NCBI RefSeq assembly: GCF_037042905.1
Contig: NC_087255.1
Span: forward strand, 12,462,001-12,526,000
From: Lytechinus pictus
Taxonomy: Eukaryota
Direction of reading: 5' to 3'
Length of the DNA: 64,000 nt
A program made the position numbers and the translations under genes. Numbering within the stretch: the first letter of the stretch is position 1; each line of letters begins with the position of its first letter. This document shows, piece after piece, positions 6,513 to 27,491 of the stretch. The notes under the pieces were generated by a model. It was not told where the DNA came from, searched no databases, and saw only the letters and a program-made list of their open reading frames with translations.

Positions 6513-6835
6513 TACATTGAATTGTTACCCATTGACTGTGTGACACAGACAGCCAAGTTCTGCACAGCTCATGGCAGCGTTTCGAAGACTGCTAATTGGT
6601 TCATTGCGCAGATCACGTCATGATCACATGGTCACAAAATAATCCAGCCCAAAGGTATGCGAAAGTATCGAAAGCGGTAACGATATCCAGCCACCTTTTA
6701 TATGGTCTTGGCTCGTGATCGGATCGCTCAAGTATCTATAGAAAATTATCAAGATTCGGCATTTTGATGCATATTCACGAGAAATTCCAAAACCCGGAAA
6801 TCAATTGACTTTGTGCACATTACGATAGATTCTAC
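6513..6835 (-). mobile_element. Diverged fragment (long-spacer end) of the CACAGTG/Transib-like non-autonomous family
   Basis: Colinear with the reverse complement of 19170-19382 joined to 26143-26237. Degenerate heptamer tacattg at 6513-6519, 14 nt from gactgtgt as in the intact end. Confidence 0.75.
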
Positions 6836-17000: not shown

Positions 17001-19382
17001 CCACCTCTTCACTTGCACCCTTAATCCATGCCCTTTTTAAAATACTTGTTTATGAACCCCTAAATAACCCCGGGGGCTGGGTCCCAATCCCCGACCATAG
17101 ACTAAGCCGGGCTTAGACAGTTCTCTCCCACTGCAGATTCACAAATGACTTTTTATGTTCATTGATTAATTCACATTCCTTTATTGTAACTCGTTAATGA
17201 AATAAAGCAATCGTTTTTGCGACACTCCCAAATTATTATTAATAAACCCCAACCAAAATCGTCAACAGAATACATAAAAACAGGTACTAGCACATGGGAC
17301 TGCACGAGAATGTATGCAGCTGGCGCCCTTTTGGGTCGCTTCGCGGCAAGAGACTCCTAAATATGACATGTTCTTATTTCTCCAGCTTCAGCCACACTTA
17401 GGTGAGCACATTGGCTCAAAGTTTGGTACCATTTGAAAGCTGGCAGTTCAGCGAGTTCAAAAACGATAGTAAACTTATTGCACACCCCCTAACTTTTGAG
17501 TAAAATGCGACTGAATCGACCCTTAAATACCACTAAATTTTGTCTTATAGAACAACGCATAAAATAGATAGAAATATATCCTAAAATATCGAATTTTTTA
17601 AAGAAAATTTCAGAAATATTTTTACCTTCGTTGTAAGCCATCTTGCTCGTCATGCAATTCAAAACTTGTCGCGAAAATGACCCAGGAAATGGATGCTGTA
17701 CAACCCGGAAGTGCTTCTGCGGAGAGGCAGATGAAGCTCCAAACAAGGAAGTATAACATGCGTTCACTGAAATAACGCACTCGTAAAACTTCATTTTTTA
17801 GAATAAAAATAAGATGACTTATTTATTCAAGAAACATCATGAAATGAAAGACAGATGTATTTTCTACGGGTGAGTGACATGAAACTTGACACTGAACAGA
17901 GTGTGGTGTCAAAAAAGGACCCCCAAAATTGATGTACGTTTGGCGTCGCTAATACAATTTCATTACTCAAAGAGTTCTGGTAAGATCCGATGATTACGAG
18001 TAGGCAATTTCAAGCAAAGAAGCAGTATTACTGTAACATGATACATGAACATATCTGCTATTGAAATGCACACACAGTAGATCCAGGTTGCTGCTCAAAA
18101 AAAATATTCCAGGGATAAAATCCATGATTTCGACTTCTAAAGATTCTTATGACTTTCGCTAATTATGGACTCCAAAAGATCGATGACCAATAAAAATCTT
18201 GTAAGGGGAAGTGATTTTCGCCAGAAATATGGCTGCCGAGATCGCACATGTTCAATCTATCGCAAGAAAATCTGCAATGGCCGCCGCGGGGGTTCCCCAC
18301 GGCGGGACATTCGACACCCTTCCAAATATGGCACTCTCCCAAATATCGGACATTTCGCCTGATTGAATTGGAAATGCTTGCTGTTGACGCTGAGCAAAGA
18401 CGTCCGACGTTTAGAGCTGAAAGAGGTTCGTTTGGTAATAAAATATTTATTATTTACCGCTGTCTTTATAATTATTGATAGTAATAATTAAAATCAGCAT
18501 TTGCGCAGCTGATACAAGTTATTTTCTCAACAATCAAGCAATTATTTTGGGGTTTATAGCGTGATTTAAATCGCCGCGCACAACTTTATGTGCCCGATAT
18601 TTTTGGGGGCAAAAAACAAGCTTCTGGTAGAAAGTAAATAATTTTTGTTCACCATATTTTTTCAATTCTATTTTTTTTAAACTAAGAGGGTATTTTGCAA
18701 TGCTTTGTCACACAGGGAATAGTAACAGAGAACAATGGGCATTATCCTGGTTTAAGTCACCACTCCATTCACTGCCGTTCATTTCGTCAGCCACAGTGGC
18801 AAATTGTATAGAACGGATAGCGGAGCGTTCAACGCTAGCGGGCGTGTACATTTTGCTGATTACATGACGTCATCCAGACACTGCCGAGAGCCAATCTATG
18901 AATGAAAATATAGTAAGCATGCGGCGGTGACTTCTTTCATCTCCCATTGACTTTGTATGAGCGCACACACACCAAAACAAGTGTGCAATTCTCTATCACT
19001 TCGTACCAAAATCGACGTAGATATATTTTATATGAATTATGAAAGGTATTCTCGGTAGATCTATTTTCTCACCTATACCGCACAGGTAAGCGAATTTTGA
19101 TTACTTCTTGCTTTTCCGTCAAAATCTTCTAATTAGCGTCGATATGGCATCATGTTCGTTGGAGTTTGTAGTCTATCGCAACGTGCTCAAAGTCAATTGA
19201 TTTCTGGTTTCGGAGCGTCGCATGAATATGCATGAAATTGCAGAGTCTCAATATTTTTTGATCGATACTGGAGCGATCCGATCGCAAACCAAGACCATTT
19301 ACCGCGTAGACAATGTGCTATCGATATCGATGCTTTTGCACGCAGTCGCTGTCCGAGGGAATTATTTTGGCGACCACGTAGT

Positions 19383-22300
19383 TAGGCACGCTCACGCATC
19401 ACAAGAGGGCGCTTTTTCGCGAGCTCCGTTCGCTGTACAAAAATTGCGACCGGCGGCGGCAGCGTGACGAAGCGAAATTGAGCTCCAGAGCCATGGCATG
19501 GCGTTCTTCAATCCACTCATACATGTATATATCGAATGCCAGAAAAATGATTTAGACACCATATGGCTGTGTGACGTATGGACTTACCTTCTGACTCATC
19601 GGCACTTCCAGCGAACCAACGAACGACGATCGAGAGGCCTGGAAAATCACTTGTAAGTACCAAATTTGCCTGATTTTGTAGAAATTTTGAGTTTTATGAA
19701 TAATTATATTACTTGCACACTGATGCATCATGATTCATGATGAAGATGAAATTCTAAGCTTTAATTTAACACCGAAATTACGTGGGAAGAACTTAGCGGA
19801 TGAAAGCGATTCAGCTTGATGCACAGGCCTGTTGCAGGCAAAATTGTATCGATTTAGCGCCTTCGCGCTCTTGAATTTCGCGGGGGGGATTTGGCGTCTG
19901 CTTCATCTGCCCTGCACAGTCCCGCGTATCGCTTTCAGTGTGCACATTTGCACTCACTTATTACGTAGGTAATATTATTTTCTTCATTTGTTAGTCATGG
20001 ACCAATTTAACATTTTATTCACTTTAAAAATGTATTATATTACAATGAACTAGATGCATAACAAAGCACACAACCTATTATTTCCTGTTCATTATGAATC
20101 ATGATGGATTTACATCTTATTCTCAGACTTTTGTTTTTACTTGTTTTCACTGTCTTCAGTTTATTTTTTATTTTTAGATCATGTATTGATATATGGTATG
20201 ATTTTTTATTTTTTTTTCCTTTTATGAATATTTGATCTATTATAGACTTGGGGAAATCGATTATTTTACACACTCAGTATTTCTATTTGTAAACTAATAA
20301 ATTGTAAAATGCTACATTTTTTTTCAGAAATAAATTGGTGAAAGGGGGGGGGGGGGAGGTGCTCCGTTCTATATTATGATTTTTTTTTCCTTTAAATCTT
20401 TATGAAAATCACATGTATTTTTATTTTCAAAGCCCTTATTGAAAATCTTTTTGACTATGATTTGATTTATTTTCTTTTATTATTATTTTTGTTTCCTTCA
20501 GGTTTCGTAATCTATTCCTGAAAACGCTAAATCGAGTCCATTATCAACTCATCATCCGCATGTCTGGCGACTGGCGAGAAAATTTCCAGGCCGATAGTGA
20601 ACATCAGTCCAGGCCAAGGATAAAGCCATGAACGACCATATCTGGCTAATGCCACATGACAAGATCTCTATGCTGGATTACAGCTAGCATATGACTAGCT
20701 TGAGAAATTTAAATATTCAAGAAAGAAACATAAGATTCTTATCTATTATTTTTTTATTATTTAGAGTTCTGTTTTGTTTGAATTTTTCGTTCTATTTTTC
20801 GTGTTTTGTTCTCGCAAAATTCTTGGAAAAAAATTATTTCTGTGTCATGTACTCCTAACAATTTCAGCACCAATTATTGCACATATTTTTTTCTGCACTG
20901 CACTGGGAAAGGGGAGGGGGGGAGTAATTTTTCTTCCAGTATTTTATCATGAATGACTTTTATCTTAATGGCACTTACGTTCTCAGGAATTTTTCTTCAT
21001 ATATGAACTGTGGTCGAAAATCTGAATTATGGAATTGTAATAACTATTATTCAATTGTTTAAAGGGTTTTTTCAGCAAGGTTGCATCATTATTTTGCCTT
21101 CCAGATATTATTATTTGGCTTTAATATAAGATCATGGCCAAAATGTCAGAAGAGGTGGATCATCTGCTCCAGCTACCAGCTGATAGGATTACTAATGGAG
21201 TTGTCATTGATCTACTGCCAAAACTCACAAGAGGAGAGGGAATTACATGGTCACAATTTCATGAAATAGTTCAAAACAAATATGACTCTGAATGTTCTTT
21301 AAAGGCCCTTCAGACCAAGTTAACAAGGATCTATGGAAGGTACATGAAACTAAACAAAACAAAACAAACTAAAGACCAAAATGATGTGAAGGTCAACTAT
21401 CTGCAAGAACCTTTCGAGCCCCCAGGAAAAATTGTTCAACCTCCAAAGAATGCTAAAGTAGACCAAGATCACGATGCTGCTAGTCCTAAAAAGAGAAAAG
21501 TCTATTCCAATGATCAAGTAGAAAATTTAGGAAAAGAACTTGAGAGATTCAAGGACATAGTACAAAAAACAGAGAGGGAAGTAATGACTTACAAGAAGAA
21601 AGTGAAGCACCTTGAGAAGGAACTGAAAAAGAATAAAGAAAAGGTTCAGTCTTTCACATCTATATTTGGCAGTGTAAGAGGTGGAAGAAAACGGATTACC
21701 GAAACAATAAAGCGACTTAAACAATCTAAAAGGGAATGGAGGATAAACTACCAAATGACAAAGAGTGAAGAAAAACGGAAGACAATTGAAATTACGAGAC
21801 TTCGAGCACAATTGCAAGAAGAAAAGAGAAGACGTCAAAGAATTCAAAAGAAATACACAGAGCAAGAAAAAATCAAGGTCGCCCAGAAGCAACAGGAGAT
21901 TGAACAACTCAAAGAAACTGTTGAAAATCTTCAAGATGAAAAAAACAAGTCCCATCATCCTCAACAAATCCAAACCAAGATTGGTCAGTCCTACACCCCT
22001 CAGATAAGAGAAGCATCCTACTATTTACAGGTTGGCTTTGAATCAAGTTGATTTATAAAAAATAAAGTGATAGGAATTAAGTCATATAATGTTCATAATA
22101 GTAATTTAAAAACTCCCCTTGTGACATTTTTAATATGTAAAACAGGTAATTGATCAGATACATGATTGTTTCCTGTGATACAGTACTGGAAACTGATCAC
22201 AAAGACCCAATTTCATAGAATATTGTAATATGGTAAACTTTGCCATTCCGGGGTAACTTGTCTGGAATCTTTGATTTTGATTGGTTGGTGATTAGCATTA

Positions 22301-25300
22301 CCATGGGATGGCAAAATTACCATTATATTAGCTTGTATGCAAAGTTGCCCTGGTCTATGATATAAAAATTACCTACTTCAATTGTTATAAAAATGTAGCG
22401 ATTATTGCTTTTACATTTTCATTAATAGCAAGGATGTTAAAAGGGATTGAAGTTCACTCAAATGCAAACAGAATAATTCAAGAATAGGATCTTTGAAACC
22501 TTGATAACAATTGGGCAAAAAAAGTTATGATGAGCATGTGTATGTTGATAACAGCATAGCTTATTATTTATCCAAAACTTCCTGTCTTCTACAGTTCAAC
22601 TGGTTTCAAGGATTTCATTCCTCATTATTGTTCACAATGAAGTTATTTCTTCCTATATTTAAACCATTTTAGATAATTTTAAGTTTGACTCAGTAATCTA
22701 TAAGCATGTACTAAATTTCTTAAGTTCAAGTAATTTTTACAAAGTTTAATACTGTTTTAATAACAAAAAGTCTCATTATAATTGTTCTGGCAAAAAAGAC
22801 AAAGCCCAAATATGCTAACCCCAAATCTAACACTACACATTGATTTTCCTAACATAGTTTTAAACAAACTTCTGTCAAACCCTAACCGTAACCAACTGTC
22901 CTTGGATCAATTGCCACAAGAGCAAATGTCACATCATTCTGATAAAGATTGCATGCAAAATTATTACTGTATCCCTCCCCACTTTTAAAAATAAATTACA
23001 GAACCTAGGAGTCGCAGAAGGCAAAGTAAGTGAAGCAATTAGAGTTGTTGCAGAAACTCTATGTGATGTGACCTTCACGAATGAGCTACCGTCTCGGCAA
23101 ACTCAAGGACGCTTTGCTTCTGAGATGAAGGCAATTTGTCGGGACCAGATTGAGGAGCATTTTGTGTCAAAAAGCAATACAACATTAAAGTATGATGGGA
23201 CAACAAAATCGCGAGTTGGTCACCTAGTAGAATGCGAACTAGCTTCTAAAGAGAAAACGTACTTGGTAGGATTATGCCAGCAAGCTGGAGGAACAAGCGA
23301 CGAATATATCAGTGCTATCAATGAATCTCTATCGGATGTGAATCCTTTACTGCTTGACGGCATAGCAAATACGATGACGGATCGAGCGAGTGTAAATACA
23401 GCAATAGACAGGAAACTTTCTGACCTGAAAGGGGAATCTCATATCAACAGCTTCAGATGTGGGATGCACCCTCTGGACACCCTTGGCAAGGCATGCGATA
23501 CTGCATTAAAGGAGAGTGAAAGCCAAGATAAATATCATAGACTTTTCAAGAAGAGAGGGGAGAGTAATACCGCATGCCTCATCAGAAAGGTAGCTGATTT
23601 ATTCCATAATGAGGCAACTGGATGTGGTATTGCTCTGACATCCTTTCTGAAGACTGCTGGTTGTCCAGCGACAACATTCCCAAGATGGGTAGGAAATCGA
23701 TTTAACATTTTATTTAAATCTGCCAAGTGCTTAGTTGCAATGATGCCATTTATTTTGAATTACTTTCAGAAAGTTCAGAAGCCCACAAATGATTTACAAT
23801 CAGCTTTGTACCAGTATCTTCAAGATCCCCACCTTCAGGCTTGTATTTGTTGTTTAGCTCTTATTTCACTCAAGATTACGGAGCCATGGATGAAGATGGT
23901 AGGTACAGCAGACAACATTCTTGGAATTAACACTGCATACCAGGAAGCAGTCAATTGTATGTCGAGTTGGGAGATGGATCCACAACTGATGCTCTCTACC
24001 AACACATGTGCCTTTGGAGAATGTGCAGCTATACCATTCATTGATGACATGAATGATGACAAAAAAGCTCCTCTATGTCCTATCTTGGGGAAAATGATGC
24101 ACGAATGTGTCATTGTGTGCAAGAGACAACTAGAAGACCAATTGCAAGGGGGAGTCTTTTGGGAACCAGGACAGGATCTATGTGAAGCTGCTGCTACGTG
24201 TTCATCTACAAACATATCTGGTGAACGTCAGTTTGCAAAGGCAGACTCTCTCTTACATAGAGCACCAAACATTTCAGTAGGAAAGATGGAAGCCAAGGTA
24301 ATGTTTTCCTCCAATGACACAAGGGATTGGTTGGAAGGTAAATCTGCAGAAGAGAAAAAGAAAACAATTACTTCAGCAATGAAGAAAGGGAAGGAGGTAC
24401 GTAAACATGATATAATTCTCTCATCGCATGTATCAAAAGCAGTAAAAGAGAAAAATGAAGCAAACAGACTTTCACTGACAGAAAAGGAGAAGAAACACAG
24501 AGAGAAAATTGAAGAAGTGATAGAGCATGTATTGGAGGAAGGTGTAATGGAAGGCACCTCATCAATTGACAAAGTTCTCTCCAAGAAGACATCAAAGACA
24601 AGCAAGAAAATTTTTCTTACAAATCAAATCAAATTTCAGCAATTTATTAATCCATCCCCAAACAAGCATTACCTATCAAAATGTAATGTTGAAGAACTAC
24701 ATCAGATCCTAGGAAATGAGTGTACCAGGAATCAAGGTGATGAAAAAATGAAAAATATCCTGATGTTGATCAAACACCCCACCTCCCTCATGAGAAAGAA
24801 TTTCACCCAAAAATGGGAAGACAACCAAGGGGTGGAAGTGTGGTGGAATGGTGTCGTTCAAAACTATAATGGCAAGGAATATGAAATAGAGTTCAACGAA
24901 TTAGAGGAGTTCTTCTATATGACCCAATCCGAAATTATTTGTGACATAATTTGTAATGACCTTAAAATCCTATAATGACACTGTGGATTGAAGCCTAACC
25001 AAAGGACGCGAGGCCACAATGGGATTGGAACAAATGACCCTCTGATAGCAAGGTGAGAATCCGAACCAACAAGTGGTCCAGTATCAAAACCTTTTTCCCC
25101 TGAGCATTATTCCTACACATCCAAGTCAAGGTAAGACAATTTTCTATTTATTCTATTAAGTATGGCAAAATCATAAATGTAGACCTAATATAATTATTAT
25201 TATAGGAAAGATATTTCTAAAGTAATACTACCATAAATAATTATCACTCACTTGTTTTCTGAGGCCCATCTGGATCAGCGAACAATAGGGCTTGCCTGGA

Positions 25301-26135
25301 ACTAAAAAAAAATCCTCCAACATAAAACTGATTCAAGGCAACAAAAAAGATAAGAAAATTGGGGTTAGATTTAAATAAATTTAAAATGAGAGTTATAGCT
25401 AGAATAAAGAAAAAAAAATACCTCCCCCAGAAGGTAACACAAACTTAAACCATTAGTGGACCCTCAACTTTCATGAGAAATTGGGAGAAACTAAGCTTGA
25501 CCCCCTCCCCCCCCCAAAAAAAAAATGGCAAGAAAACAATTACAAAAACCCCCAGCTATGTTTAACCAATCATGTGATTGCCCCCCCCCCCCCATCAAAA
25601 AAAGAAAAATATTCACTAAAGATTGTTTAAGGGGCACATCATATATGTCCCCTCCCCCCCCCCCCCCCACCTCCCTAATCCGCCTCTGAAAAACTAAAAA
25701 TAGAACTTGTCAATTTCCAAGCAAACACATTTCAAGAGAAACAGCTGTGTTTACCTCATTATGCATGGGAAAAAACAATATTTATTCATGAATATGCATG
25801 TGAATGTGCGCGACGCGTCTACGCTGTTCCAATGAGGATTGCAGGCCTAGCGCTCCATCGCGCCGTAACCATGCCATGGCCCCACGCATACGCTACCCGC
25901 TCGTACCCGCCCAGCGTTGGTAAGGTGGGTCACGTGCGCGCTAGCTGGATGCGACTCTCGCCGAGCCGACGAAAGGCAATAGACGCAGCATTTTTAGTAA
26001 AAAATCTGATTTCCATGTTTTTCCGAGTTTTTCAACAAACCAAGTTAGGAAATGTTTTATTGAACATCTAATCTTTCTTTTGAGGTAAGTTTTATAAAAT
26101 TTCATTGGAGTTGAAAATTTCCGTGAGCGTGCCTA
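19383..26135 (+). mobile_element. Full-length, potentially autonomous hATw-like DNA transposon (6753 bp)
   Basis: Perfect 14-bp TIRs taggcacgctcacg (19383-19396) / cgtgagcgtgccta (26122-26135); perfect 7-bp TSD acgtagt (19376-19382, 26136-26142); encloses an intact transposase gene. 7-bp TSDs are characteristic of the hATw group. Confidence 0.92.
21134..24975 (+). CDS. hATw-like DDE transposase, 956 aa, two coding exons (21134-22030, 23002-24975)
   Basis: Phase-0 GT..AG intron 22031-23001 joins ...SYYLQ|NLGVAEGKVSEAIR..., which aligns with the uninterrupted first transposase. Motifs YDGTTK, MTDRAS, RCGMHPL, GNRFNILF, STNISGERQFA; C-terminal Tudor-like domain. In-frame TAA just upstream of ATG 21134; candidate 5' UTR acceptors at ~20501 and ~21104. 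Confidence 0.9.
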
Positions 26136-27491
26136 ACGTAGTCATGACGTGATCTGCGCGATTGACCAATCAGCGGTCACCGATTCGCTGAGCTGGTCTA
26201 TCCGTTGTACACAGTCTATGGACGATTTACCACTGTGTCAGCGGCGGTGACTTCATCTCCCATTGACTTTGTATGACTATGACTATGAGCGCACACACAC
26301 GAGAAGAGAGGCGACTTATTTCAGCATGTTCAGGATAAGGCCGAACAATGTTGTTAGCCTTATTCATTGAATGAGTGCATCAAAGTGATCTCCTAAGTAT
26401 TCTCTCAATGGTCTGATTTTGGAGAGTAACCTCGCGAATACATGTCATGAATTGAATAGCGAAGTTTATGCGTCTCTATCTCAAAGTTAGAATAGCCCAC
26501 ACGAAGTTGGGTTTGTGGGACTGAATATTATAAACCTGAACAAGAGACAATTTAACATTAATGATTAGATCAAAATATTCGACAGCACAATAATAATTTA
26601 GGAATTATGTTCTTAAAGTAAAATGATACTAAGCTTCCTTCACCTATAATGATAAAGAATATATTCAAAATACCTGAGATAACGAACTTTGCTGAAAATA
26701 AAATGAAATCTCCGTCAGGTTGTACTCGATATCACATGGAATGGAATTGTGCACGTTGTTTCGAGCTTATAGTATCGCCGAAACGTCCAAATGGAAGGGG
26801 GAAAACAGATTGTCAGACATTCATGTTCTTTAGCATAATTATTATCGTTTCTACGACTATACCACCACTACCACCACTACCACTACTACTACATTCTGTA
26901 CATGTCTTCATAAATATTCAATGAGCAAACTGATAACCCCACTTGTTCTTTTTTTTTATTTCATTATATGAAATTATGTTTTTTTATTCAAAGTTTTTCC
27001 TCCAAGAAATAAAGAAGTCGGATTGACAACTGATTTGATGCATCAAATATTAATTACTGCAACTTATTTTATCAGAAGGGAGACATAATTATTCACATTG
27101 GTATGAAGAAATTAAATAATTATGATTTCATGTAATAACGTAAGAAAAGGAAAAGTGGGGATGCGGCATCCTCAGCCCACCTGAGGCCCATCAATGACTA
27201 AGTACAAAACTGTTTTCACAAAATATTGTTTAGTTTTAAAATTCAATAAATTCTTTATAAGTTATAAGATGTTGATGAAATTTTCATTTTCATTTTCCTA
27301 GCATTTTGCTAGGTGAATTTTACTCTGTTTATATTTTCAACCCGGTACCCCCTGGACCTGGGAAGCGGGGGTGCTGCGTGTATTATTTTCCATATGCAGC
27401 ACCCCCACGAAATCAGGTTCCCCCTGTATTTTTTGAAATATGTTATAATGTACATAATTATCACAAATCACAATCACAATCACAAATCATT

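What the first reader, a model, noticed from the sequence alone, without database searches (positions are those of the whole stretch)
18787..26242. Hidden transposon with RSS heptamer ends, 5-bp TSD and 12/23-like asymmetric spacing
Seen: removing the nested hATw element leaves a ~686-bp element bounded by perfect CACAGTG heptamers and a tcagc 5-bp TSD. Left end: CACAGTG + 12 nt (gcaaattgtata) + gAACGGATAG. Right end read inward: CACAGTG + 23 nt (gtaaatcgtccatagactgtgta) + cAACGGATAG. Counted to the identical 9-mer AACGGATAG the spacers are 13 and 24; the 11-bp (one helical turn) offset holds either way. Established: V(D)J recombination signals are CACAGTG + 12/23 spacer + nonamer; Transib and RAG-like transposons have CAC termini and 5-bp TSDs; echinoderms encode RAG1/RAG2-like genes. 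Inference: this is a non-autonomous partner of a Transib or RAG-like transposase that may follow a 12/23-type rule with a different distal motif (not ACAAAAACC). Because it is split by 6.8 kb it would be missed by ordinary repeat finders.
Basis: partly seen in the sequence, partly recalled or inferred. Interest (0 to 1): 0.9.

Follow-up and report, generated by a model that had tools for sequence, protein, structure and literature searches.

The report
Sea-urchin Transib/RAG-type MITE, asymmetric ends
This is a real copy, split by a later insertion, of a several-hundred-copy miniature DNA transposon whose ends look like a 12/23 pair of V(D)J recombination signals; such asymmetric ends are already known in Transib and RAG-like transposons, and the enzyme that moves this family was not found.

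Summary
Observation confirmed. Window 18792-19382 plus 26143-26237 is one ~686-bp element split by a 6.75-kb nested transposon. In other copies the two parts are contiguous.

The family gives about 490-570 candidate matches in this genome. It has 16-bp terminal inverted repeats (CACAGTGGCAAATTGT) and target-site duplications of exactly 5 bp. An inverted 9-mer, AACGGATAG, lies 13 nt from the heptamer at the left end and 24 nt at the right. That spacing holds in 23/24 left and 28/34 right ends; a minor subfamily has 22 and still carries its own duplications.

These hallmarks fit a non-autonomous Transib/RAG-like transposon. No autonomous copy was found. The only RAG1-core homologues detected are RAGL-B-type genes and fragments with no link to the element, and no Transib profile was available.

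A 12/23-type rule is not shown, because all copies descend from one founder. 12/23-like end asymmetry is published for insect Transib families (2005), for Ptychodera RAGL-A (2023) and for ProtoRAG. This is therefore a new member of a known kind.

First-stage readers flagged at least ten similar elements elsewhere in this genome; I could not check them.

The parts
18787..18791 (.). left copy of the 5-bp target-site duplication (tcagc)
18792..19382 (+). left 591 bp of the miniature transposon (MITE)
   Evidence: 100% self hit and 82-87% hits to full-length copies elsewhere
18792..18807 (+). left 16-bp terminal inverted repeat: heptamer CACAGTG (18792-18798) plus a TR2-like 9 bp, GCAAATTGT (18799-18807)
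18808..18811 (+). remainder of the short (13-nt) spacer, ATAG; variable between subfamilies
18812..18820 (+). left distal 9-mer AACGGATAG
19376..19382 (.). left copy of the 7-bp duplication (acgtagt) made by the nested insertion
   Evidence: (element positions 585-591 appear on both sides)
19383..26135 (+). nested 6.75-kb transposon with 14-bp inverted ends (taggcacgctcacg and cgtgagcgtgccta); not part of the MITE
   Evidence: intact MITE copies lack it
26136..26142 (.). right copy of the 7-bp duplication of the nested insertion
26143..26237 (+). right 95 bp of the MITE
26198..26206 (-). right distal 9-mer (AACGGATAG on the minus strand)
26207..26221 (-). right-end extra spacer (CCATAGACTGTGTAC read inward); it contains the 11 nt absent from the left end and an inverted heptamer-like GACTGTG
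26222..26237 (-). right 16-bp terminal repeat, CACAGTGGTAAATCGT read inward; 14/16 identical to the left repeat in this copy and 16/16 in young copies
26238..26242 (.). right copy of the 5-bp target-site duplication (tcagc)
6575..6829 (-). old, truncated relative of the same family (73% identity to element positions 381-639); its degraded right end keeps the 24-nt spacing

Best explanation
The feature is one old copy (about 8% from the family majority sequence) of a ~695-bp non-autonomous cut-and-paste DNA transposon of the Transib/RAG-like (RAGL) superfamily. A second transposon later inserted into it.

Shown:
- The family has hundreds of copies, some only 1.7-3% diverged.
- It has a 16-bp terminal inverted repeat that begins with the exact RSS heptamer CACAGTG.
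- It makes strictly 5-bp target-site duplications.
- Its ends are bipartite. One inverted copy of AACGGATAG lies 13 nt from the heptamer at one end and 24 nt at the other. There is no sequence similarity between the two ends in the rest of the spacer or beyond the 9-mer.

Inferred mechanism: a RAG1-core-type DDE transposase supplied in trans recognises the heptamer plus the adjacent 9 bp at both ends. It nicks at the heptamer border, releases the element through hairpins on the flanking DNA, and integrates with a 5-bp stagger. The distal 9-mer most likely serves as a second contact for a separate DNA-binding domain of the same enzyme. The 11-bp offset (about one helical turn) keeps it on the same face of the DNA at both ends and makes the two ends non-equivalent.

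Not shown: whether pairing of one short and one long end is enforced (a 12/23-type rule). I rate that at about 0.3. The transposase source is unidentified; it could be Transib or RAGL-B.
For: Element and join:
- Other copies are contiguous across the join.
- Candidate matches number 566 and 487. Exact heptamer-spacer-9-mer sites number 78 against 2 for the control.

Superfamily hallmarks:
- Duplications are 5 bp in 17/25 pairings and no other length fits.
- The 16-bp terminal repeat is identical at both ends in young copies.

End architecture:
- Spacing is 13 in 23/24 left ends and 24 in 28/34 right ends.
- The 9-mer occurs once per end, with no subterminal arrays.
- Variants shared between subfamilies fall in the spacer and the TR2-like block. 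In the 9-mer only changes at its CpG were seen.
- Heptamer/TR2 variants are mirrored at both ends in subfamilies: CACAGTGAC in L017 and CACAGCGAC in L016 and L025.

Age and context:
- Youngest copies are 1.7% from the majority sequence.
- The genome holds RAG1L-B genes with intact cores and the TR2-binding Cx2Cx3GHx4C tail motif.

Literature:
- 5-bp duplications and CAC heptamers define Transib and RAGL (PMC1131882, PMC7204232).
- Asymmetric bipartite ends are known in both (PMC1131882, PMC10629977, PMC8289069).
Against: - No autonomous element with these ends was found. All exact 16-bp termini in the genome belong to the MITE itself.
- RAG1L loci show no similarity to the MITE and no such termini within the DNA I hold.
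- Transib transposases could not be searched for lack of a profile.
- The target duplications are only mildly GC-enriched (46% against 37% for the window). Transib and RAGL are reported to prefer GC-rich targets.
- The 9-mer is not A-rich and matches the RSS nonamer at only 2 of 9 positions.
- A 13/22 subfamily transposed, so the spacing is not rigid.
- Conservation of the asymmetry within one family is explained by descent alone.
Confidence: 0.72

Rival explanations
1. Same element and superfamily, but the asymmetry is a historical accident. The founder had a longer terminal repeat of about 40 bp and one end gained or lost 11 bp. The transposase reads only the terminal ~16 bp, as shown for ProtoRAG. 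The 9-mer is then a passively inherited remnant with no role.
For: - All copies form one family, so the 13/24 spacing is inherited.
- A 13/22 subfamily with its own duplications exists.
- A variant right end reads CCATAGACTTT + ATAGAACGGATAG, that is the left-end sequence plus an 11-nt insert. This points to a simple indel origin.
- For RAGL-B, only the first 16-17 bp of the terminal repeat are essential (PMC7204232).
- Substitution density in the right-end 9-mer is no lower than in the interior.
Against: - The ends share two discrete blocks (16 bp and 9-10 bp) and nothing else. Random decay of a long repeat would not give that pattern.
- No subfamily-defining change hits the 9-mer apart from CpG decay, whereas the adjacent spacer and TR2-like positions do vary.
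- The left 9-mer shows 1 change in 162 cells against about 5.5 expected.
- The offset is close to one helical turn.
- Other families of the superfamily show the same kind of asymmetry (PMC1131882, PMC10629977).
Confidence: 0.4
2. The element belongs to another superfamily that can give short duplications and CA-type ends (hAT5/hAT6 groups, Chapaev/CACTA, Ginger2). The resemblance to recombination signals is coincidental.
For: No transposase is linked to the family. Some hAT groups are listed in Repbase with 5-6-bp duplications (my own knowledge, not checked here).
Against: - Duplications are strictly 5 bp, never 3, 4 or 8.
- The termini are the exact CACAGTG heptamer, not a hAT-type end.
- The ends are bipartite with a second conserved block, which hAT termini lack according to PMC1131882 (its Figure S7 legend).
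- There are no CACTA-type subterminal repeat arrays.
Confidence: 0.07
3. The ends are substrates of the host's domesticated RAG1L/RAG2L proteins rather than of a selfish autonomous element. The family would have been, or still be, mobilised or excised by the sea-urchin RAG-like genes.
For: - The only RAG1-core homologues found are RAGL-B-type. Two of the loci carry intact core ORFs with the TR2-binding tail motif.
- The MITE has a conserved 9-bp block next to the heptamer, in the position of TR2.
- Some copies are young, yet no autonomous partner was detected.
- The literature calls identification of genomic targets of sea-urchin RAG1/2L a crucial open step (PMC8355894).
Against: - No physical or sequence link between RAG1L loci and the MITE.
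- The AAA of the TR2-like block sits 2 bp off the RAGL consensus (PMC7204232).
- Sea-urchin RAG1L/2L showed no recombination activity in published assays (PMC8355894).
- Transib elements, which I could not search for, are known in echinoderms (PMC10629977).
Confidence: 0.12

Closest known systems
Transib families with 12/23-like ends: Transib5 (D. melanogaster), Transib2_AG, TransibN1-N3_AG (Kapitonov & Jurka 2005, PMC1131882)
   Same: 5-bp target duplications. CAC heptamer termini. A 5' end like a 12RSS and a 3' end like a 23RSS. Non-autonomous members exist.
   Different: Those are insect families with a CACAATG-type heptamer and an A-rich distal nonamer. Here the host is a sea urchin, the heptamer is exactly CACAGTG, the next 9 bp are conserved at both ends, and the distal motif AACGGATAG contains G/C.
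PflRAGL-A terminal repeats of Ptychodera flava (Martin et al. 2023, PMC10629977)
   Same: Same layout: RSS-like heptamer, then about 9 bp conserved at both ends (TR2), then a spacer with 10-11 bp length asymmetry, then a distal 9-mer. 5-bp duplications.
   Different: The PflRAGL-A distal element is AT-rich and nonamer-like, its duplications are GC-rich, and the ends flank a RAG1L-A/RAG2L-A gene pair. Here the element has no gene, the motif is not AT-rich, and no RAGL-A-type gene was detected (only RAGL-B-type).
Amphioxus ProtoRAG (RAGL-B) terminal repeats (PMC8289069, PMC7204232)
   Same: CAC terminus and a conserved block next to the heptamer. A distal conserved 9-mer (TR5) that is not A-rich. 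Asymmetric spacers. 5-bp duplications. RAGL-B-type RAG1L genes are present in this genome.
   Different: The ProtoRAG offset is 4 bp (27/31), not 11. Its heptamer is CACTATG. In ProtoRAG the first 16-17 bp suffice for cleavage.
Transib1_SP and TransibN1_SP of Strongylocentrotus purpuratus (PMC1131882)
   Same: Transib elements, one of them non-autonomous, in a sea urchin, with 5-bp duplications.
   Different: I cannot say whether this family is related to, or already deposited as, a named sea-urchin Transib family.
Vertebrate V(D)J recombination signal sequences
   Same: Identical heptamer CACAGTG. Two classes of site whose spacers differ by 11 bp (12/23 counted to the 10-mer, 13/24 to the identical 9-mer). 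Paired in inverted orientation.
   Different: The distal motif matches ACAAAAACC at 2 of 9 positions. The first 9 spacer bases are conserved at both ends. The sites bound a mobile element with target duplications, not gene segments. Canonical 12RSS sites are not enriched in this genome (28 against 51 for the control).

Membership tests
Transib/RAG-like (RAGL) DNA transposon superfamily | 5-bp target-site duplication | tested here: met
   17 of 25 end pairings have identical 5-mers; none fits length 4 or 6-9. Window copy: tcagc on both sides.
Transib/RAG-like (RAGL) DNA transposon superfamily | Terminal inverted repeats that start 5'-CAC with an RSS-like heptamer | tested here: met
   CACAGTGGCAAATTGT at both ends.
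Transib/RAG-like (RAGL) DNA transposon superfamily | Mobilised by a RAG1-core-type DDE transposase (an autonomous relative with the same ends) | tested here: inconclusive
   No longer element shares the termini. RAG1L-B loci exist but are unlinked. No Transib profile was available.
Transib/RAG-like (RAGL) DNA transposon superfamily | [quoted passage not shown] | tested here: inconclusive
   Duplications are 46% GC against 37% for the window, from only 17 sites.
RAGL-B transposons (ProtoRAG type) | A-rich TR2 block directly after the heptamer, conserved at both ends | tested here: inconclusive
   9 bp (GCAAATTGT) are conserved at both ends. The AAA is at positions 10-12, against 8-10 in the published consensus CACTWMCAAACKTYKBB (PMC7204232).
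RAGL-B transposons (ProtoRAG type) | Convergent RAG1L-RAG2L gene pair between the terminal repeats | tested here: not met
   The element is about 690 bp with no such gene. The RAG2 Pfam model finds nothing in the genome, although that model is known to miss invertebrate RAG2L.
12/23 recombination-signal pair | Heptamer CACAGTG | tested here: met
12/23 recombination-signal pair | Spacers of 12±1 and 23±1 bp | tested here: met
   13 and 24 nt to the identical 9-mer, or 12 and 23 to the 10-mer SAACGGATAG. 23/24 left ends and 28/34 right ends; 3 right ends have 22.
12/23 recombination-signal pair | A-rich nonamer (ACAAAAACC) | tested here: not met
   AACGGATAG matches at 2 of 9 positions. Canonical 12RSS sites are not enriched.
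12/23 recombination-signal pair | Cleavage only in a synapse of one short and one long site (the 12/23 rule) | not testable with these tools
   Needs biochemical or cell-based assays.
MITE (miniature inverted-repeat element) | Short, non-coding, high copy number, terminal inverted repeats and target duplications | tested here: met
   About 695 bp. 487-566 candidate matches. No RNA-family match. Terminal repeats and duplications as above.
hAT superfamily (rival) | 8-bp duplications and hAT-type termini without a second conserved block | tested here: not met
   No pairing fits 8 bp. The ends are bipartite.
CACTA/EnSpm and Chapaev (rival) | 3-bp or 4-bp duplications, CACTA termini, subterminal repeat arrays | tested here: not met
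   2 of 25 pairings fit 3 bp and none fits 4 bp. The 9-mer occurs once per end.

The most novel reading that the evidence does not exclude
This MITE family, and possibly the other 12/23-like families that first-stage readers flagged in the same genome, is the natural substrate of a sea-urchin RAG-like or Transib enzyme that requires one short-spacer and one long-spacer end. That would be a working 12/23-type rule in an echinoderm using a non-A-rich distal motif. It would supply the long-sought genomic targets of echinoid RAG1L/RAG2L, or reveal a still-active partner transposase.
Probability: 0.15. Interest if true: 0.8.

Novelty: new member of a known kind. Interest (0 to 1): 0.45.

Why it matters
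The origin of the 12/23 rule is actively debated: the 'Transib seed' idea against a RAGL-A origin (PMC8355894, PMC10629977). No transposition-competent RAGL element, and no natural DNA target of sea-urchin RAG1L/RAG2L, has been reported in echinoderms.

This family offers a defined substrate pair for testing that question. It is abundant and partly young, it lies in a deuterostome, and it has the exact RSS heptamer, a TR2-like block and an 11-bp spacer asymmetry. The substrates could be tested with echinoid Transib transposases and RAG1L/2L.

On the evidence here it adds an example to a known phenomenon. It does not show a new one.

Tried and rejected
1. Longer relatives that might encode the transposase. 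Copies whose match breaks at element position 526 (L061, L062/L063, L036) and the 1.0-2.1-kb forms are MITEs with unrelated nested insertions, not deletion-series relatives.

2. Pfam RAG1 (PF12940) and a RAG1L protein against the whole genome. Only RAGL-B-type loci came up, closest to amphioxus RAG1L 6B40. None has the MITE termini or any MITE similarity in the DNA I hold. The homology borders between the C182 and C10 copies show no CAC terminal repeat.

3. Getting a Transib query. The 150 best hits of the representative search are all RAG1/RAG1L. The Atlas search pointed to PF26100, which is not in the local Pfam copy. The RAG2 Pfam model found nothing.

4. Enumerating all exact 16-bp termini. 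All belong to this family.

5. Looking for a second family through canonical 12RSS sites. No enrichment.

6. Laying public reads on a young copy (L011) to look for an empty-site allele. The flanks are repetitive and only one unclean joint appeared, so nothing can be concluded.

7. Metagenome scans. The 29-mer found nothing and the 16-mer found only chance matches.

8. Rfam and single-strand folding of the ends. Nothing.

Full report
**What is in the window.** The left end reads tcagc|CACAGTGGCAAATTGTATAGAACGGATAG. The right end, read inward, reads CACAGTGGTAAATCGTCCATAGACTGTGTACAACGGATAG|tcagc. The composite pattern heptamer-N(6-34)-AACGGATAG occurs only at these two places in the 64-kb window, against 0.00 expected from shuffles. 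The 9-mer alone occurs only there too.

Between the two parts lies a 6.75-kb element (19383-26135). It has perfect 14-bp inverted ends and a 7-bp duplication, acgtagt. Its ORFs have no significant Pfam match, so I confirm that it is a nested insertion but not its 'hATw' label.

**It is a family, and the join is right.**
- Searching the window's own assembly (811.7 Mb) with the left 591 bp gave 566 candidate places. Full-length matches were 79-87% identical.
- The right 95 bp gave 200 candidates.
- In at least 18 distinct copies the two parts are directly contiguous, giving elements of 628-701 bp.
- Exact heptamer-spacer-9-mer sites number 78 genome-wide, against 2 for the reversed-pattern control.
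- Young copies are 1.7-3% from the majority sequence of 18 aligned copies. The window copy is 8.1% away.
- Read depth in public runs suggests on the order of 10^3 copies, and the family appears under at least two organism labels. That measure is crude.
- Some copies are not independent insertions. At least eight 5'-truncated copies share identical flanks, so they were amplified as passengers of a larger repeat.

**Hallmarks.**
- Target-site duplications are exactly 5 bp. Of 25 end pairings, 17 match at length 5, none at 4 or 6-9, and 2 at length 3 by chance. The sequences differ from copy to copy: ctgta, ccttc, ctctt, gggaa, tgata, ccccg and others.
- They are 46% GC against 37% for the window. 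That is at most a weak GC preference.
- Young copies have a perfect 16-bp terminal inverted repeat, CACAGTGGCAAATTGT.
- Strictly 5-bp duplications with a CAC heptamer are the defining signature of Transib and RAG-like transposons (PMC1131882, PMC7204232). They exclude hAT (8 bp), CACTA (3 bp) and Chapaev (4 bp).

**Anatomy of the ends.** After the shared 16 bp, the left end has 4 nt (ATAG, variable between subfamilies) and then AACGGATAG. The right end has 15 nt (CCATAGACTGTGTAC) and then AACGGATAG. Beyond the 9-mer the two ends are unrelated.
- In 24 distinct left ends the heptamer-to-9-mer distance is 13 in 23 cases.
- In 34 right ends it is 24 in 28 cases, 22 in 3 cases, and not scorable in 3.
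- The 9-mer occurs once per end, so there are no arrays of subterminal sites.
Counted to the 10-mer SAACGGATAG, the spacers are 12 and 23.

**What the conservation does and does not show.** All copies belong to one family, so uniform spacing is expected from descent. It does not demonstrate a rule.

Three observations lean towards function for the distal block:
- The ends share two discrete blocks and nothing in between.
- Variants that define subfamilies, and so were present in transposing masters, fall in the left spacer (A17G, G20C) and in the right TR2-like block. In the 9-mer only CpG-type changes were seen. The left 9-mer has 1 change in 162 cells against about 5.5 expected.
- Changes in the heptamer and TR2-like block are mirrored at both ends in subfamilies: CACAGTGAC in L017 and CACAGCGAC in L016 and L025.

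Three observations lean the other way:
- A subfamily with 13/22 spacing carries its own duplications (L015, L042).
- A variant right end equals the left-end sequence plus an 11-nt insert. That points to a simple indel origin.
- The right 9-mer is no less variable than the interior of the element.

**The partner transposase.**
- The RAG1 Pfam model and a RAG1L protein query found about ten loci. Two carry intact core ORFs: one at C182, identical at C233 (612 codons), and one at C4 (624 codons). The rest are fragments, including tandem arrays on C9 and C2.
- All are closest to amphioxus RAG1L, PDB 6B40, so they are RAGL-B type.
- The two intact cores carry the Cx2Cx3GHx4C tail motif, which binds TR2 in ProtoRAG (PMC7204232).
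- None of these loci shows MITE-like termini or similarity in the DNA I hold. The borders of homology between two 91%-identical copies show no terminal repeat.
- Every exact 16-bp terminus in the genome continues as the MITE. No properly oriented pair of ends lies more than 3 kb apart.
- Transib transposases could not be searched, because no profile or query sequence was obtainable.
- The partner therefore remains unknown. Transib and RAGL-B are both open.

**Comparison with what is known.**
- Kapitonov & Jurka 2005 (PMC1131882) reported that several Transib families (Transib5, Transib2_AG, TransibN1-3_AG) have a 12RSS-like 5' end and a 23RSS-like 3' end. They also described Transib1_SP and TransibN1_SP in sea urchin.
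- Martin et al. 2023 (PMC10629977) describe PflRAGL-A terminal repeats as heptamer-TR2-asymmetric spacer (10 bp)-nonamer. [quoted passage not shown]
- ProtoRAG prefers its asymmetric 27/31 pair (PMC8289069).
- The same literature notes that no transposition-competent RAGL element is known in echinoderms, and that the genomic targets of sea-urchin RAG1/2L are unknown (PMC10629977, PMC8355894).
- Against this background the family is a new echinoderm member of a known kind. What sets it apart is the exact RSS heptamer, a TR2-like block, an 11-bp offset and a non-A-rich distal motif.
- I could not check Repbase or Dfam, so it may already be catalogued.

**Other notes of this scan.** First-stage readers flagged at least ten further 'Transib/RAG-like elements with 12/23-like ends' on other pieces of this genome. 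One is 706 letters long and is probably this family. Several are about 1.16-1.25 kb, and others are 1.8-2.06 kb. No pair of this family's exact ends lies at about 1.2 kb, so some of these may be separate families. That would bear directly on constraint. I had neither their coordinates nor their sequences, so they remain leads only.

**Verdict.** The classification as a non-autonomous Transib/RAG-like element is well supported by structure. The 12/23-rule reading is plausible but untested, at about 0.3. Novelty is modest.

Noticed in passing
window 26243-26330, compared with window 18923-18975: The DNA just right of the element is itself a repeat, with at least 87 candidate copies at 72-95% identity. 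It shares a ~50-bp module (ggcggtgacttc...gcgcacacacac) with the inside of this MITE copy. Young MITE copies carry a different 37-bp segment at that position, so the window copy belongs to a variant lineage and sits inside a related or module-sharing repeat.
   Followed up: partly
L022, L024, L045, L046, L047, L051, L054, L055 (for example L047, whose match starts at element position 29): At least eight 5'-truncated MITE copies lack the first 28 nt and have identical flanks on both sides. L005 and L009 are full-length copies with the same right flank and the aaata duplication. One insertion was evidently amplified as a passenger of a larger repeat, which inflates copy counts.
   Followed up: partly
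G000 C9:18143020-18195827; C2:5168566-5172019; C182:16498-18231 (identical at C233); C4:15674907-15676673; C10:30964928-30966174: About ten RAG1L-B-type loci. Two carry intact core ORFs with the CTT* zinc-knuckle motif: one at C182, identical at C233, and one at C4. A copy on C10 is 91% identical to the C182 one but carries stop codons. Tandem arrays of RAG1L C-terminal fragments lie on C9 (units of about 4.1 kb) and C2 (about 2.5 kb).
   Followed up: partly
MITE positions about 526-591 (window 19376-19382; L061, L062/L063, L036, L034): At least five independent nested insertions of unrelated elements hit the same ~65-bp stretch of different MITE copies. Two hit the ACGTAGT site region. This looks like an insertion hot spot.
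   Followed up: no
window 18860-18900 and 26143-26175; L003 element positions 70-105, 290-300 and 595-625: The MITE carries two direct copies of a promoter-like module (TGACGTCA/TGACGTG followed by CCAAT) and a consensus splice donor (CAG|GTAAGT). It could be a remnant of the 5' region of the autonomous element, or a source of regulatory motifs.
   Followed up: no
window 26207-26221 (minus strand): The long spacer contains GACTGTG, a 6/7 inverted copy of the heptamer, 14 nt inside the true heptamer. It is conserved in the family. It may be a cryptic heptamer or a trace of how the 11-nt extra arose.
   Followed up: no
L028, L029, L030, right ends: In three copies with shared flanks the terminal CACTGTG is replaced by the perfect 18-nt palindrome CACAGCTAGCTAGCTGTG. 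Origin unexplained.
   Followed up: no
window 19383-26135: The nested 6.75-kb element has ORFs of 305 and 635 codons with no significant Pfam match. Its superfamily assignment rests on structure only (14-bp inverted ends and a 7-bp duplication).
   Followed up: partly
window 6575-6829 (minus strand): An old, 5'-truncated relative of the same MITE family (73% identity). Its degraded right end still shows 24 nt between the 9-mer-like and heptamer-like blocks.
   Followed up: partly
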